Below, piece after piece: positions 157-5,017 of a stretch of DNA of 5,017 nt. The stretch is taken from the NCBI RefSeq assembly GCF_006345805.1, contig NW_021830308.1:1-5017 (forward strand), written 5' to 3'. Source of the DNA: Octopus sinensis. Taxonomy: Eukaryota. The stretch's first letter is position 1. Each line of letters starts with the position of its first letter. A program made the translations under genes and the position numbers. The notes beneath the pieces are model-generated. The model was not told where the DNA came from, ran no database searches, and was given only the letters and a program-made list of their open reading frames with translations.

Positions 157-910
157 GCGTATCCAGTCATTGAACCACGTATACAGCCAAATTATTTTGA
201 TAGAGCCGTTCGCAGCTCATCATCTTCACATTTGTTGATTTTGGCAACATCTTTCGAATCCAATAATGCTACATATCTATATCGATATATCTTTCATACC
301 AGTTTGATCTAGGCTCGCATAGCTTAAAGTTTCGTGGGTAACTAGGTCACATCCATCTCATCAGATGCCTCCTAAACTCTGTGTCATGTGAAGCTGAAAC
401 AAACAAATAAAAGTACATGTATTGTATCATATCGTATTGTTTGCTTTATCTCGCACCCGAGATTTTTATTTCCTGTATTCTAATCGCTTCCTTTATGGTG
501 ATGGTGTTGATGACTATGCCGACCAGTTGTTGCACGGAAGAAACCATGGCATTTACTGCTTGGGGGAATGAGGTTTGATTTTATCGAGCCTTGTTTGATT
601 TCCCCTTTTTCTCTTCTCTGGTAGCTTCGAAGATTTTAGCTCTGATGGTGATGAACATAGCCCGTGGACCCGGTCTTGGGTTTGTGTTTCAAGCGATTAA
701 GGCTCAAGTCTACTCTGCTCTTTACTCTTTTACTTGTTTCAGTCATGCAACTGTGGCCATGCTGGAGCACCGCCTTTAGTCGAGCAAATCGACCCCAGGA
801 CTTATTCTTTGTAAGCCTAGTACTTATTCGATCGGTCTATTTTGCCGAACCGCTAAGTTATGGGGACATAAACACACCAGCATCGGTTGTCAGGCGATGT
901 TGAGGGACAA

Positions 911-1025
911 ACACAGACACACATACAAACACAGACATACAGATACACACACGCACACATACACACACACATACACACACACACATACACACACACATGT
1001 ATATATATATATATATATATATATA
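911..1025. repeat. Internal (CA/TACA)n + (TA)n microsatellite inside SINE copy A
   Basis: Read directly; lies between the SINE body (1026-1186) and its 3' module (718-910). Confidence 0.95.
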
Positions 1026-1121
1026 CGAACTTCTTTCAGTTTCTGTCTACCAAATGTACTCACAAGGCTTTGGTCGGCCCGAGACTATTGTAGAAGACAC
1101 GTGCCCAGGGTGCTACATAGC

Positions 1122-1176
1122 GGGACTGAACCCAGAAACCATGTGGTTGGTAAGCAAGCTACTTACCACACAGCTA
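1122..1176 (-). promoter_or_regulatory. Internal RNA Pol III type-2 promoter (A box and B box) of SINE copy A
   Basis: A-box-like TAGCTGTGTGG at 1176-1166 and B-box-like GGTTCAGTCCC at 1132-1122, 33 nt apart, which is tRNA-like spacing. Activity cannot be judged from sequence. Confidence 0.7.
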
Positions 1177-1568
1177 CTTCTGCGCCTGTTTGTTGAAGTC
1201 CTTCAAAGATGTACGTCGGTCCATTAACCCAATGGTAGCATAGATCAACAGTATATAAAGGTATAATGAGCTAGGTTAGTAATATCGTGGTTGGCCTAAT
1301 TAGCTTAGTTGTGTTATTTACGGTTAGTCCTTAATTAGACAATATTGATTAATGGTAAACTATCAAAAAACAAAAAGAATAGATGTGCAAATCAGACTAT
1401 CTACTACAGTACATTTGATTATTCAAGAAAGTCGAATTCAGTTTCTCTGATGGTTGGTAAAACACACATAAAAGTGTCCTCCAGGAAATACTATTTTACC
1501 CGCGATGATAAACTATTTATATTGCTATTTAACCAAAAGTGAAAATTTATAATGCATGCATACTTTCA

Positions 1569-1658: not shown

Positions 1659-1667
1659 TATTTTATT

Positions 1668-1973
1668 CTCAGTGGCTAGAGCGTCGTGCTTACGATCGTG
1701 AGGTTGTGAGTCCAATTCCCAGGCCAGGCTGTGTGTTGTGTTCTTGAGCAAGACACTTTCACGTTGCTCAAGTTCACTCAGCTGTAGAAATGAGTTGAGA
1801 CGTCACTGGTGCCAAGCTGTATCGGCCTTTGCCTTTCTCTTGGATAACATCAGTGATGTGGAGAGGGTAGGCCGACATGCATGGGCGACTGCTGGCCTTC
1901 CAAAAACAACCTTGCCCGGACTTGTGCCTCGGACTTCCTAGGTGCAATCTCATTCATGACCGAAGGGGGTCTC
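1668..1973 (+). mobile_element. tRNA-derived CORE-type SINE, 5' end clipped by about 10 nt
   Basis: Head CTCAGTGGCTAGAGCG...GTGAGTCCAATTCCC gives a partial A box and a degenerate B box (AGTCCAATTCC, 1709-1719). 1731-1794 (GTGTTCTTGAGCAAGACACTT...GCTCAAGTTCACTCAGCTGTAGAAATGAG) aligns by eye to the MIR/CORE domain (GTGACCTTGGGCAAGTCACTT...CCTCAGTTTCCTCATCTGTAAAATGGG, quoted from memory). The 3' boundary is approximate. Confidence 0.8.
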
Positions 1974-2139
1974 CTTATTCTTTTACTTGTTTCAGTGTCT
2001 GCGGCCATGCTGGAGTACTACCTTAGATGGTTTTAGTCGAAGAAATCGACCCCCGGGTTTATGTTTGTAAGCCTAGCGCTTATTTTAATGTTTTCCTTTG
2101 CAGAACCGCTAAGTTACAGGGACGTAAGGATATCAGCAT
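1974..2139 (-). mobile_element. Headless 3' module of the copy-A SINE family (copy B), variant with ~9 extra nt
   Basis: TTTTACTTGTTTCAGT...GGCCATGCTGGAG...TTAGTCGA...GTAAGCCTAG...GAACCGCTAAGTTA matches 727-883 in the same orientation. It has TTAGATGGTTTT where copy A has TTT. Confidence 0.88.
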
Positions 2140-2283
<144 letters not shown>

Positions 2284-2478
2284 TGTGTGTCTGTGTTTGT
2301 TCCCCCAAATATCGCTTGACAACCGATGCTGGTGTGTAACTTAGCTGTTCGGCAAAAGAGACCGATAGAATAAGTACTAGGCTTACAAAAATAAGTCCTG
2401 GAGCCGATTTGTTCGACTAAAAGGTGGTGCTCCAGCATGGTCGCAGTCAAATAACTCAAACAAATAAAACAGTAAAAG

Positions 2479-2479
<1 letters not shown>
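2284..2479 (+). mobile_element. Headless 3' module of the copy-A SINE family (copy C), opposite orientation, with a 12-nt internal deletion
   Basis: Matches the reverse complement of 718-920; by hand count, about 18 differences in the last ~135 nt (about 87% identity), with a 22-nt exact block GAATAAGTACTAGGCTTACAAA. It lacks the 12 nt TTTATGTCCCCA at about 2336. Confidence 0.9.
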
Positions 2480-2517
<38 letters not shown>

Positions 2518-2548: not shown

Positions 2549-2764
2549 ATAATAATAATATGACAACAAAAGAACGAAAGAGACCTCGATATTATGTAAA
2601 TAGAGGAATTTATCTATAAATATAATATGTGACAATTAGTTGGTTGTCATAATAAATCTCTAAGTTTCGGATGCCGGTGCCGAAGACTGCTCTGACATCT
2701 CATCAGGAATAACTGATGAGATGCCGGAGCAGAGTTTTATTATGACAGCCAACTGAGTGTCACA
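2549..2764. mobile_element. Inverted-repeat element with a hammerhead-like motif; probable Penelope-like-element terminal (pLTR) remnant
   Basis: Arms 2628-2661 and 2731-2764 match at 30/34; arms 2687-2706 and 2713-2732 match at 18/20 around a 6-nt spacer. The minus strand reads CTGATGA-stem-CGAAAC. Assignment to Penelope-like elements is inferred from their known hammerhead-bearing, often inverted terminal repeats; no Penelope ORF is present. The left boundary is approximate. Confidence 0.5.
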
Positions 2765-2983: not shown

Positions 2984-3010
2984 ATACTTTGATACTTTGA
3001 TACTTTGATA
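2984..3010 (-). repeat. 8-bp tandem 3' tail of the LINE: TAT(CAAAGTAT)3
   Basis: Plus strand (TACTTTGA)3 at 2985-3008. Short tandem-repeat tails rather than poly(A) are an established feature of CR1/L2-clade elements. Confidence 0.9.
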
Positions 3011-3074
3011 GGTTCGGCCATTATTGGCCAGGCCATGTCTAACTTAATAGCACCACCTGGTGAAGTCTTTCAAG

Positions 3075-5017
3075 TCAGAATTTGGGCACTATGGCCCACT
3101 CAAGTAGAGAGTTATTGTTTACAGAGACATATCCGGGTGTAGGGGTTTATCCGGGATTTCTTGAAGGAATCTGTCCAAAGACTTCTTGAACCCTATAGGG
3201 TCAGTTTCTGTTTTAATGTTTTTGGTGTATGTTAAAGAGAGCGGGGCCAATTGAGGTGAAATAATTGTGCCGTATTGTTGTTATGAGATGAGAGTGCGAT
3301 TTTTGTTTTGGGCGGATGGCACGGGCCCAAGCCTTGGATGTACCTTAAGGTGATGCCAACATCATTTGGGCAATGCTGATGGAATATTTTCCACATCATG
3401 CAGATGATGTAGCGCTCACGACGACGTTGGAGGGAATAGAGTTTTAGCTTTTCTAGTCGACCCCAATAGTCGAGGCCTGTCATGCCATCTATCTTTTTTG
3501 TGATTGCCCTTTGAGGTGCTTCAACTTTTATGATACCTTGTATTGTGTGGGGAGACCACAGTGGACAACAGTATTCAAGGTGGGGTCGGGCAAAAGTGGA
3601 GAAGAGAAGGATAATGGTGTGGATATCTCTCGACCTGGAAAGTTCTGAAATCCAGGAACACATTCTGCGGGCCATGTCAACTTTGGTGTTTATATGAGTG
3701 GCCCAGCTTACGTTGTTGTCCACAATTACTCCCAAGTCTCTGATGTTGTTGGACGCCGCGAGAGTTTCACCTGAAGGAAGGGAGTATGGGAGTTTCAGGG
3801 CATCCTCTTTTCCAAGTGGATTAGCTCAAATTTATCCTCGTTCAGCAGCATATTGTTTTTTTCTGCCCATTGGATAACAGCCAGTAGATCTGACTGAAGG
3901 CATGTCCCGTCACTCGCCTCATTTATGACCTTCTGTAGCTTGGAGTCATCTGCAAAGATTTTATGTTGCTGTGCTTGATGATGTCATTATGTCATTAATG
4001 TAAATGATGAAAAGAAGTGGGCCCAGCACAGTGCCTTGCGGAACGCCACTACTGACTTTGGCTGGGCTTGATTTTACCCCTTCAACTACAACATGTTGAG
4101 ATCTGTCTGTCAGGAAACACTTAATCCATTTCAGTAACTTTCCAGAGACACCAATGTTGGATAGTTTTTTCAATAGGATCTTGTGATCGACCCTGTTGAA
4201 GGCCCTACTGAAATCAAGGTAGATGACATCGGTGTTGGAGCCCTCTCCCAAAGCTCTCAAATGTCCTCAAAGTGATGCAGGAGCTGCGTTAGGCAGTCCC
4301 TTCCATTACGGAACCCATGTTGGTTGGAGATCAGCCGTGTCTGTCTGCTTCCAGAAATGGGTTATTCGAGATCTCACCACCCTCTCAAATACCTTGATGA
4401 TATGAGAGGTGAGTGAGATCGGACGGTAATTCACTGCAAGGGACTTGTTTCCCTTTTTGAAAACTGGGACAACAGACTGGGACAGAAGGTTTTTTGGAAT
4501 ATAGCCAGCATCCAGTGAGTTTCTCCACAGATTAGCAAGGGGAGATGCAAGTTGGTGTCGACACACCTTCAGGACACAAGCAGGGAACCTATCGGGGCCT
4601 ACTGCTGATTGTGTTTTATTTCGTTTATCGCCGCTAAGACATCAGGGGCACTAAACGTTATGTCCGATATGTGTGTTGGGGGTTGACATCACTGATACAG
4701 CCCAGATCGGCCATATCAGGATTGCTGAAAATAGAGCAGTATTGTTTCTGCAGTATCTCGGCCATGGATTTGGCATTATCTTGGAGAGTGCCAGTTTCGT
4801 CAATTAGAGGGCCTACAGTGGAGACAGTGACCCTGCGTTTCTCGCAAATGAAAAGAACACTTTGGGGTTGAGTTTGATTTTTTCAATGGCCCACTTCTCC
4901 TCAGCTGATCTTTGTTATTGATGAGGGTCTTCATACATTGTTGGAGGTTATATTTTTTGGATTCAAGCAGTGCGATAGCCGTCGAATGTATGTGTTGCTG
5001 TTGGCAGTACTTTAGTT
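3075..5017 (-). pseudogene. LINE ORF2 (linker, reverse transcriptase and C-terminal domain), frameshifted as given; the endonuclease domain would lie outside the window
   Basis: Translation across frames gives EEKWAIEKIKLNPKVFFSFA; VGPLID..AEILQKQYCSIFS; SAVGPDRFP; VVPVFKKGNK..NYRPISLTSHIIKVFER; NQHGFRNGRDCLTQLL; [16 protein letters not shown]; [20 protein letters not shown]; FADDSKL; RDLGVIVD; RPHLEYCCPLWSP; LYSLQRRRER; FTSIGPALFN; FKKSLDRFLQEIPDKP.TPGY..NNSLLEW. About 16 indels must be repaired to join these. Confidence 0.9.

What the first reader, a model, noticed from the sequence alone, without database searches (positions are those of the whole stretch)
2984..3057. LINE and both SINE families share a 3'-terminal architecture with different but pairing stems
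LINE (minus, 3057-2984): GGTGGTGCT, 11 nt, CATGGCC, T, GGCCA-ATAA-TGGCC, GAACC, then the (CAAAGTAT)n tail. SINE copy A (minus): GGCGGTGCT, CCAG, CATGGCC, A, CAGTT-GCAT-GACTG, AAAC, then an AAAAGAGT-type tail. Copy C (2423 onward): GGTGGTGCT, CCAG, CATGGTC, G, CAGTC-AAAT-AACTC, AAAC; A and C together reconstruct CAGTC-N4-GACTG. The motif order, 1-nt offset, 5-bp stem, 4-nt loop and 8-nt tail period (5/8 identical) are all the same, although the stem sequences differ. The CORE-SINE (1941-1964) ends GGTGCAATC, TCA-TTCA-TGA, CCGAA, versus the LINE's CCA-ATAA-TGG, CCGAA: a T-A for C-G swap with the 4-nt loop kept. It is established that CR1/L2-type RTs recognise a 3' stem-loop and that SINEs borrow LINE 3' ends (for example eel UnaL2/UnaSINE). 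The inference is that this LINE lineage mobilises two distinct SINE families through a structure-level signal, with all three partners in one 5-kb window.
Basis: partly seen in the sequence, partly recalled or inferred. Interest (0 to 1): 0.75.

Follow-up and report, generated by a model that had tools for sequence, protein, structure and literature searches.

The report
Octopod LINE and SINE shared tails
A decayed CR1-like LINE and three copies of an abundant octopod tRNA-derived SINE end in the same two-hairpin-plus-8-base-repeat module that many marine CR1-like LINEs carry, but the SINE's tail was borrowed from a different, related LINE family, so this is an ordinary, already known kind of LINE/SINE partnership.

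Summary
The window is octopod DNA.

**Shared module.** GGTGGTGCT and CATGGCC are the two arms of a first hairpin.
- A covariance model built only from marine-metagenome LINE 3' ends finds the window LINE (32.4 bits, E=4.6e-6) and its Argonauta relative (32.0 bits).
- Both stems covary across 24 LINEs: 91% paired against 73% in shuffles.
- SINE copy A folds into the same topology.

**Partner LINE.** The window LINE is probably not the SINE's partner.
- SINE versus window LINE similarity is at chance for copies A and B (179 and 330 of 1000 shuffles) and marginal for copy C (6 of 1000).
- A second CR1-like family, "LINE2", found in Argonauta and two ENA contigs, matches the SINE tail. Hairpin 1 is 20/20 identical, the spacer AAAC is identical, and the tail unit is TAAAAGAA against TAAAAGAR (z=10-17).

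**CORE-SINE.** This link is unsupported: no model hit, no stable fold, chance-level similarity, and its true 3' end is not visible.

**Verdict.** This is a new member of a known kind. Bivalve CR1 LINEs with V- and CORE-SINEs, and amniote CR1 hairpin plus octamer, are already described.

The parts
2984..5017 (-). 5'-truncated (by the window edge), decayed CR1-like LINE ('LINE1'): RT domain and ORF2 C-terminal region with several frameshifts and stops
   Evidence: RVT_1 E=2.5e-30 on the stitched translation. Best relative is an Argonauta hians protein at 61% identity. Three-frame translation.
3075..3077 (-). Reconstructed ORF2 stop codon (TGA) after ...PDKPLTPGYVSVNNNSLLEWAIVPKF, 17 nt upstream of hairpin 1
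   Evidence: Frame-2 translation compared with the C-termini of relatives ...PDTPPTPGY..N.NSLLEW....
3031..3057 (-). LINE hairpin 1: GGUGGUG / CAUGGCC arms (G-C, G-C, U.G, G/G mismatch, G.U, U-A, G-C) with a 13-nt loop
   Evidence: MFE and centroid fold. Aligned to hairpin 1 of models R1 and R2.
3016..3029 (-). LINE hairpin 2: GGCCA-AUAA-UGGCC
3011..3015 (-). Spacer GAACC (GAAAC in the Argonauta LINE1, LINE2 and the SINE)
2984..3010 (-). LINE tail, (ATCAAAGT)x3.4
   Evidence: TRF period 8, 100% matches. The Argonauta orthologue has (ATCTAAGT)3.
711..1193 (-). SINE copy A, full length: tRNA-like head about 1025-1193, internal TG/TA microsatellite about 905-1025, body and tail 711-905. Possible 7-nt target-site duplication GACTTGA (704-710) and GACTTCA (1194-1200), read on the minus strand.
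   Evidence: Sequence reading. The target-site duplication is inference.
736..774 (-). SINE A 3' module: hairpin 1 GGCGGUGC-UCCA-GCAUGGCC (774-755), A (754), hairpin 2 CAGUU-GCAU-GACUG (753-740), spacer AAAC (739-736). The tail AAGTAAAAGAGTAAAGAG follows at 735-718, outside these coordinates.
   Evidence: Fold ..(((.((((....)))).))).(((((....)))))...., -15.4 kcal/mol, ensemble frequency 0.83. R2 hit 726-776, 9.8 bits. Hairpin 1 is 20/20 identical to L084.
1971..2139 (-). SINE copy B, 5'-truncated in its internal microsatellite. The 3' module at 1989-2022 is decayed (GGTAGTAC..., hairpin 2 reduced to CAG-ACA-CTG). Tail AAGTAAAAGAATAAGGAG.
2300..2480 (+). SINE copy C. 3' module at 2423-2461 (GGTGGTGCTCCAGCATGGTC G CAGTC-AAAT-AACTC AAAC); hairpin 2 is broken by mutations.
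1665..1970 (+). Its 3' side runs directly into the tail of SINE B, so its true end is not visible. It is not shown to belong to the shared-tail system.
   Evidence: No R2 hit at E<=10. Tail MFE z=+1.2. Local alignments at chance level.

Best explanation
The window is octopod DNA. It holds a dead copy of a CR1-like LINE ('LINE1') and three copies of an abundant tRNA-derived SINE.

Both end in the 3' module typical of a large clade of CR1-like LINEs of marine animals:
- hairpin 1, with base 5'-GGYGGU...AUGRCC-3', a conserved G/G mismatch flanked by G.U pairs, and a variable distal stem and loop;
- immediately after it, hairpin 2, free in sequence but kept as a stem;
- a short A-rich spacer (GAAAC-like);
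- a family-specific 8-10 nt tandem repeat.

By analogy with stringent-type LINEs (inference from established work on eel UnaL2 and amniote CR1), the LINE's reverse transcriptase binds this structured 3' end of its RNA and primes on the repeat tail. A pol III transcript that carries a copy of the module is mobilised in trans.

The SINE carries a minimal 39-nt version with a 4-nt hairpin-1 loop. It was copied from a second octopod family, 'LINE2', not from the LINE in this window. The window LINE is a clade relative with the same architecture, and at most an occasional cross-mobiliser.

Shown: the architecture, its covariation, and the close SINE-LINE2 match. Inferred: RT recognition and trans-mobilisation.
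For: 1. The terminal ~80 nt of LINE1 are 81-82% identical between the window and Argonauta hians, while the ORF is 65% identical.
2. 80 related LINE loci from marine metagenomes show the same two-hairpin plus repeat layout in raw sequence and in MFE folds.
3. Models R1 and R2 were built only from those loci. They hit window 2996-3059(-) at 29.1 and 32.4 bits (E=2.9e-6 and 4.6e-6) and L001:12236-12301 at 31.5 and 32.0 bits.
4. Covariation on 24 LINE ends: 91.3% of cells paired against 72.7% in shuffles (0/500). 10 of 14 pairs have double changes, including all 5 pairs of hairpin 2. Slid controls give 21-54%.
5. After the two LINE ends, the three next R2 hits in 54 kb are LINE2 copy 1 (12.5 bits), SINE A (9.8 bits) and LINE2 copy 2 (9.0 bits).
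6. LINE2 ends: L001 minus 13400-14330 has two truncated copies with an ORF2 C-terminus ...LYSLERPRERY...FKSKLNRLLQSVPDEP.... L084, L085 and L087 belong to the same lineage. L084 reads GGCGGTGCTCCAGCATGGCC-T-CAGCC-ACT-GGCTG-AAAC-(TAAAAGAA)2. SINE A reads GGCGGTGCTCCAGCATGGCC-A-CAGTT-GCAT-GACTG-AAAC-AAG(TAAAAGAG).
7. Shuffle tests: SINE A versus L084 z=17.2, versus L085 z=13.6, versus Argonauta LINE2 z=10.3, all 0/1000.
8. SINE A, L084, L085 and Argonauta LINE2 have identical fold topology.
9. In hairpin 2, CAGCC/GGCTG (LINE2) versus CAGTC/GACTG (SINE A plus C combined) is a compensatory C-G to T-A change.
10. Literature: CR1 3' hairpin plus octamer as the presumed RT recognition site (PMC4316615, PMC8665684). 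Bivalve CR1 LINEs share stem-loop tails with two SINE families (PMC4824008).
Against: - No octopus LINE2 copy with exactly the SINE's hairpin-2 stem and TAAAAGAG unit was recovered. L084 and L085 come from metagenome contigs of unknown organism.
- The SINE consensus rests on three copies, two of them decayed.
- R2 scores for the SINE tails are individually not significant (E=0.74).
- Within octopods, hairpin 1 is conserved in sequence with only single-side, structure-preserving changes, so that set says little about structure.
- The covariation alignment was fitted to the model.
- In many relatives hairpin 1 lies inside the last ORF2 codons (...GRSxxLMTQ*, ...GGPQMA*), so part of its conservation could be protein-level.
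- No experiment links any of these RTs to these RNAs.
Confidence: 0.72

Rival explanations
1. One reading: the LINE lineage present in the window (LINE1) is itself the mobiliser of the tRNA-derived SINE and of the CORE-SINE. It recognises only the overall shape, so different stems and tail units are tolerated.
For: - Same module order and same hairpin-1 base (GGYGGUG/CAUGGCC) in LINE1 and the SINE.
- Hairpin 2 varies freely across the clade, so its sequence may not matter.
- In bivalves, single CR1-Zenon LINEs match the tails of several SINE superfamilies (PMC11481361).
Against: - LINE2 ends match the SINE far better: z=10-17, against z=0.9 and 0.6 for copies A and B and 3.6 for copy C with LINE1.
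- The tail unit ATCAAAGT differs from TAAAAGAG at 3 of 8 positions.
- The hairpin-1 loop is 13 nt against 4 nt.
- The CORE-SINE tail shows no module.
- The window copy is dead.
Confidence: 0.12
2. The resemblance between the SINE tails and the LINE 3' ends is chance similarity of short GC-rich motifs plus ubiquitous small hairpins.
For: - SINE A and B versus the window LINE local alignments are at chance level.
- 3-5 bp hairpins are common.
- The CORE-SINE part is indeed chance level.
Against: - 20/20 identity of hairpin 1, and 53-column local alignments with LINE2 ends at z up to 17.
- SINE A ranks directly among the top hits of a model built from unrelated organisms.
- Fold topology is identical.
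Confidence: 0.03
3. The conserved GGYGGU...AUGRCC element is kept for the protein it encodes (ORF2 C-terminal ...GG..MA or ...G.S..LMTQ), not as an RNA signal. The SINE merely carries a piece of coding sequence.
For: In many relatives the element lies within the last codons and the peptides recur.
Against: - In the window LINE, the Argonauta LINE1 and LINE2, the element lies downstream of the stop codon, and in the SINE it is non-coding, yet it is kept.
- The distal stem covaries (TCAG/CTGA, TCGA/TCGA, TGC/GCA) and peptide sequences between the two arms are not conserved.
Confidence: 0.08

Closest known systems
Bivalve CR1-14_CGi (and CR1-Zenon) LINEs with BivaV-SINE2 and BivaCORE-SINE1 (Nishihara et al. 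2016, PMC4824008; Mob DNA 2024, PMC11481361)
   Same: - A mollusc CR1-type LINE shares its 3' end with tRNA-derived SINE families.
- The similarity is backed by conserved stem-loops and compensatory changes.
- The shared stretch is 35-61 bp.
- One LINE lineage can match several SINE superfamilies.
   Different: - The host is a cephalopod, not a bivalve.
- Here the matching LINE (LINE2) is not the one in the window.
- A CORE-SINE partnership is not shown here.
- Sequences of the bivalve tails were not available to compare directly.
Amniote CR1 3' UTR: hairpin plus octamer microsatellite (ATTCTRTG)n (Suh et al., PMC4316615; Galbraith et al., PMC8665684), and CR1-tailed SINEs such as the passerine SINEs (PMC5729268)
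   Same: - A structured 3' end directly followed by an 8-nt tandem repeat.
- Conserved far better than the ORF.
- Thought to be the RT recognition site.
- Tail unit length can shift (8 to 10 nt), as seen here (7-11 nt).
   Different: - Here two adjacent hairpins are resolved, with a conserved G/G mismatch.
- The repeat units differ (xCAAAGTA-like).
- In many relatives hairpin 1 overlaps the ORF2 end.
- Clade-level relationship to amniote CR1 was not tested.
Eel UnaL2 / UnaSINE1 (Kajikawa and Okada 2002; own knowledge)
   Same: Works like it in principle: a stringent-type LINE whose RT needs a 3' stem-loop plus a short repeat tail, and a SINE that borrowed that end.
   Different: - L2 clade, a single stem-loop, a 5-nt (TGTAA) repeat.
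- Experimentally proven there; only inferred here.

Membership tests
CR1-group (CR1/L2-like) non-LTR retrotransposon | Reverse transcriptase domain of the LINE type | tested here: met
   RVT_1 E=2.5e-30. 3577 homologues with E<=1e-20, several also with Exo_endo_phos_2.
CR1-group (CR1/L2-like) non-LTR retrotransposon | APE-type endonuclease upstream of RT in the same ORF | not testable with these tools
   The window ends inside the element. Homologues P0055 and P0119 carry PF14529.
CR1-group (CR1/L2-like) non-LTR retrotransposon | Phylogenetic placement of the RT with reference CR1, CR1-Zenon, L2 or Rex1 sequences | not tested
   No reference TE library (Repbase or Dfam) is available in the tools. 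'CR1-like' rests on the C-terminal ...LYSLQRRRERY...FK..LD.FL... region, the 3' structure and the octamer tail (own knowledge plus PMC8665684).
CR1-group (CR1/L2-like) non-LTR retrotransposon | 3' hairpin followed by a short tandem repeat (no poly-A) | tested here: met
SINE with a LINE-derived 3' tail (stringent-type partnership) | pol III (tRNA-related) head | tested here: inconclusive
   ARAGORN finds no tRNA. By eye, the head of copy A has an A-box-like TAGCTGTGTGG and a B-box-like GGTTCAGTCCC.
SINE with a LINE-derived 3' tail (stringent-type partnership) | 3' end homologous to the 3' end of a LINE of the same host lineage | tested here: met
   - Met for the tRNA-SINE against LINE2: (z=10-17). 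Argonauta is the only LINE2 source of known taxon.
- Not met for the SINE against the window LINE at sequence level.
SINE with a LINE-derived 3' tail (stringent-type partnership) | Same tail repeat unit as the partner LINE | tested here: met
   - SINE TAAAAGAG/TAAAAGAA against L084 TAAAAGAA.
- Not met against the window LINE (ATCAAAGT) or the Argonauta LINE2 (AAAACATT).
SINE with a LINE-derived 3' tail (stringent-type partnership) | Trans-mobilisation by the LINE's RT | not testable with these tools
   Needs a retrotransposition assay.
   - No R2 hit at E<=10 with filters off.
- The MFE fold lacks the proposed hairpin, z=+1.2.
- Alignments are at chance.
- No tail repeat is visible before SINE B begins.
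   No reference CORE consensus is available. Resemblance is by eye only. The literature says tRNA-Core SINEs are abundant in octopus (PMC8967140).

The most novel reading that the evidence does not exclude
A bipartite 3' RNA module is the common RT-recognition signal of a metazoan-wide marine CR1-like clade. It consists of hairpin 1 with a near-invariant GGYGGU/AUGRCC base (G/G mismatch flanked by G.U pairs, often overlapping the last ORF2 codons), a freely covarying hairpin 2, and a family-specific octamer. The SINE expansion in octopus genomes (SINEs are about 11-12% of the O. vulgaris genome) would then have used a minimal 39-nt version. That version might be read by more than one resident LINE family (LINE1 and LINE2), because the two share the hairpin-1 base.
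Probability: 0.3. Interest if true: 0.5.

Novelty: new member of a known kind. Interest (0 to 1): 0.3.

Why it matters
- SINEs make up about 11-12% of the O. vulgaris genome (PMC13282606). The cephalopod repeat surveys I could read name no partner LINE for them.
- Pointing to a specific CR1-like lineage (LINE2, tail TAAAAGAR) gives a testable candidate for the engine of that expansion.
- The two-hairpin model with its covariation gives a compact descriptor. It can be used to annotate 3'-anchored CR1-like copies and their SINEs in marine invertebrate genomes.
- Conceptually it adds nothing new to the established picture of SINEs borrowing structured LINE tails.

Tried and rejected
- Looked for more octopus copies; all of the following failed:
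  - the window ORF is not on record;
  - a protein search with the antisense translation of the SINE found nothing;
  - exact-pattern scans for the SINE tail in metagenome, genome and viral contigs found nothing;
  - P0124 is not on record.
- Long ENA contigs L082 and L083 hold no octopod SINE.
- L086, L088 and L089 are chimeric or belong to more distant families.
- Rfam gives only microsatellite artefacts below the gathering scores. ARAGORN finds no tRNA.
- MAFFT alone misaligns the 5' arm of hairpin 1 when loop lengths differ. I therefore seeded a model from 8 well-aligned ends and re-aligned the rest to it.
- An alternative CORE-SINE alignment (GACTTC-CTAGGTG...CATGACC against LINE1 GACTTCACCAGGTG...CATGGCC) was rejected. 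It is at chance (90/1000) and the upstream stretch is not conserved in the Argonauta LINE1.
- Coding constraint as the sole cause of hairpin-1 conservation was rejected, because the element is non-coding in LINE1, LINE2 and the SINE.

Full report
**What is in the window**

The 5,017-base window is repeat-rich animal DNA.

- **LINE.** The minus strand from 5017 down to 2984 is a decayed LINE.
  - A stitched translation has an RVT_1 domain, E=2.5e-30.
  - Its best relative among 5.8 billion proteins is a hypothetical protein of the octopod Argonauta hians at 61% identity. The next hits, at about 50%, come from marine metagenomes.
  - Comparison with the C-termini of those relatives (...PDTPPTPGY..N.NSLLEW...) shows that the real ORF2 ran on, through a frameshift, to ...NSLLEWAIVPKF.
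- **tRNA-derived SINE.** Three copies are present.
  - A: 711-1193, minus strand, full length, with an internal TG/TA microsatellite.
  - B: 1971-2139, minus strand.
  - C: 2300-2480, plus strand.
- **Second SINE.** A different tRNA-related SINE lies at about 1665-1970 on the plus strand.

**Check of the observation**

They pair as G-C, G-C, U.G, a G/G mismatch, G.U, U-A, G-C.

The 49 nt before the tail fold as `.((((.((((((......))).))).))))(((((....))))).....` at -19.5 kcal/mol, z=-2.8.

**Is it a real, conserved feature?**

- *Conservation in Argonauta.* The Argonauta locus L001 carries the orthologous LINE. Its ORF is 65% identical in DNA, but the last ~80 nt are 81-82% identical, and its tail is (ATCTAAGT)3.
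- *Marine relatives.* A scan of metagenome contigs with an alignment of ORF2 C-termini returned 80 related LINE loci. Their 3' ends show the same layout in raw sequence and in MFE folds:
  - a hairpin with base GGYGGU...AUGRCC, the same G/G mismatch, and a distal stem that changes by compensation (TCAG/CTGA, TCGA/TCGA, TCA/TGA, TGC/GCA);
  - directly after it, a second hairpin of free sequence (GTAGA-GGAA-TCTAC, GTCC...GGAC, TCCG...CGGA);
  - an A-rich spacer;
  - a 7-11 nt repeat, usually ending in AAGTA.
- *Covariance models.* I built model R1 from eight of these ends and R2 from the 24 that R1 re-aligned. Neither contains any octopod sequence.
  - R2 finds window 2996-3059(-) at 32.4 bits (E=4.6e-6) and the Argonauta LINE end at 32.0 bits.
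- *Covariation on the 24-sequence alignment.*
  - 91.3% of cells are paired, against 72.7% in shuffles (0/500).
  - 10 of 14 pairs show double changes, including all five pairs of hairpin 2.
  - Sliding the partners drops pairing to 21-54%.
  - The alignment was fitted to the model, which favours the structure, but the slid controls and the variety of pair types are clear.

**The SINE tail**

SINE A folds as `..(((.((((....)))).))).(((((....)))))....` at -15.4 kcal/mol, 83% of the ensemble. This is the LINE topology with a 4-nt hairpin-1 loop. Copies B and C are too mutated to fold.

After the two LINE ends, the three next R2 hits in 54 kb are two sites in the Argonauta locus and SINE A, at 12.5, 9.8 and 9.0 bits. 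Each is individually non-significant.

The two Argonauta sites turned out to be 5'-truncated copies of a second LINE family, which I call LINE2.
- Its ORF2 C-terminus reads ...YWDRLKMLKLYSLERPRERY...FKSKLNRLLQSVPDEP...NSLL.
- Its 3' end reads GGTGGTGC-ACCA-GCATGGCC-G-CAGCC-GACTG-GGCTG-AAAC-(AAAACATT)n.

The last protein search, with that C-terminus, brought in further LINE2 members on ENA contigs.

| Element | Hairpin 1 | Link | Hairpin 2 | Spacer | Tail |
|---|---|---|---|---|---|
| L084 (LINE2) | GGCGGTGCTCCAGCATGGCC | T | CAGCC-ACT-GGCTG | AAAC | GGT(TAAAAGAA)2 |
| L085 (LINE2) | GGTGGTGCTCCAGCATGACC | A | CAGCC-ATAT-GGCTG | AAAC | CAATTAAAGAATTAAAA |
| SINE A | GGCGGTGCTCCAGCATGGCC | A | CAGTT-GCAT-GACTG | AAAC | AAG(TAAAAGAG)TAAAGAG |
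| SINE B | – | – | – | – | tail TAAAAGAATAAGGAG |

- Hairpin 1 of SINE A is 20/20 identical to L084. The spacer is identical and the tail unit differs by at most one base (one search shows the alignment).
- In hairpin 2, CAGCC/GGCTG in LINE2 against CAGTC/GACTG in the SINE (copies A and C combined) is a compensatory change.

Local-alignment scores against 1000 dinucleotide shuffles:

| Comparison | z | Shuffles at least as good |
|---|---|---|
| SINE A vs L084 | 17.2 | 0/1000 |
| SINE A vs L085 | 13.6 | 0/1000 |
| SINE A vs Argonauta LINE2 | 10.3 | 0/1000 |
| SINE A vs window LINE | 0.9 | 179/1000 |
| SINE B vs window LINE | 0.6 | 330/1000 |
| SINE C vs window LINE | 3.6 | 6/1000 |

LINE1 and LINE2 share only 35% identity over the ORF2 C-terminus.

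**The CORE-SINE**

- Its supposed terminal hairpin is a 3-bp stem that is not part of the MFE fold (z=+1.2).
- R2 gives no hit there, even at E<=10 with filters off.
- Its best local alignments to LINE1, LINE2 or the other SINE are at chance (90-627 of 1000).
- No tail repeat is visible. The element runs straight into the tail of SINE B, so its genuine 3' end is probably missing or displaced.
- With one copy and no way to fetch more, this part cannot be tested further. As it stands it is unsupported.

**How it most likely works**

- *Shown:* a structured, covarying two-hairpin module with a family-specific repeat at the end of a broad CR1-like clade. The module is present, in minimal form, at the end of the octopod SINE. 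The SINE tail closely matches the LINE2 family.
- *Inferred from established work:* the LINE RT binds the structured 3' end of the transcript and starts target-primed reverse transcription on the repeat. A pol III transcript bearing the module is copied in trans. This rests on amniote CR1 hairpin plus octamer as the presumed recognition site (PMC4316615, PMC8665684), on eel UnaL2/UnaSINE1 (own knowledge), and on bivalve CR1 tails (PMC4824008).

Because each LINE family has its own repeat unit and the SINE's unit matches L084, the LINE2 lineage is the likely partner. LINE1 shares the hairpin-1 base, so occasional cross-mobilisation is not excluded.

**Comparison with what is known, and novelty**

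- Nishihara et al. 2016 described the same situation in bivalves: CR1-14_CGi shares conserved stem-loop tails, with compensatory changes, with a V-SINE and a CORE-SINE.
- A 2024 study extends this to CR1-Zenon LINEs that match the tails of four SINE superfamilies.
- The cephalopod repeat papers I could read describe abundant tRNA-Core and tRNA-Deu SINEs and CR1 LINEs in octopus, but name no partner.

The finding is therefore a new member of a known kind. The small additions are a candidate partner lineage for the octopod SINE and an explicit two-hairpin descriptor with a conserved G/G mismatch.

**Limits**

- No TE reference library was available, so 'CR1-like' is not a phylogenetic placement.
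- The organisms behind L084 and L085 are unknown.
- The SINE consensus rests on three copies.
- E-values from the shortened model calibration are rough.

Noticed in passing
window 2630-2760 (+): A near-perfect long inverted repeat, TTGGTTGTCATAATAAA...CATCTCATCAG-GAATAA-CTGATGAGATG...TTTATTATGACAGCCAA. It folds into one hairpin of -70.1 kcal/mol, z=-10.6 against shuffles. It could be a foldback or MITE-like element, or a hairpin-RNA locus. It gives no Rfam match.
   Followed up: partly
L002-L081, e.g. L006:2025-2086; proteins P0038, P0042, P0052, P0063, P0071, P0120: In many marine relatives, hairpin 1 of the 3' module lies inside the last ORF2 codons. In L006, CTG CTA GGG CGG TCA GAA TCT CTG ATG ACC CAG TAG encodes LLGRSESLMTQ*, and the stop codon sits in the 5' arm of hairpin 2. 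Recurrent C-termini such as ...G[RW]S..LMTQ, ...GGPQMA and ...GG..MA look like by-products of an RNA signal that overlaps coding sequence.
   Followed up: partly
L001:13400-14330 (-): Two adjacent 5'-truncated copies of a second CR1-like LINE family (LINE2) in Argonauta hians, with tail (AAAACATT)n, about 1.1 kb downstream of the LINE1 copy's 3' end. This family, not LINE1, matches the octopod SINE tail.
   Followed up: yes
protein P0124: A 94-aa protein labelled 'hypothetical protein, partial [Escherichia coli]' in NCBI and UniRef is 69% identical to the C-terminus of the Argonauta LINE2 ORF2. It is probably a cephalopod LINE fragment mislabelled through contamination. It could not be looked up.
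   Followed up: partly
window 1971-2480: SINE copies B (minus) and C (plus) lie head to head. Each is truncated inside its internal TG microsatellite, and they flank a perfect (ATCT)25.5 array at 2169-2270. Inverted-repeat arms 2031-2118 and 2335-2422 are 81% complementary. This suggests a rearrangement or recombination between two SINE copies rather than two simple insertions.
   Followed up: no
window 315-374 (-): A weak R2 match (4.9 bits, E=9.9): AGGAGG...UGACC...ACGAAACUUUAAG. The stretch also contains CATCTCATCAGATG, which recurs in the palindrome at 2697-2733. It may be a relic of another LINE or SINE tail, or chance.
   Followed up: no
window 2568-2585 (+): ACAAAAGA ACGAAAGA G is a two-unit 8-nt repeat resembling the SINE tail unit. 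It lies beyond the (AT)n array that follows SINE C. It might be a displaced part of a SINE tail.
   Followed up: no
window 704-710 and 1194-1200: GACTTGA and GACTTCA (read on the minus strand) flank SINE copy A. This is a possible 7-nt target-site duplication with one mismatch.
   Followed up: no
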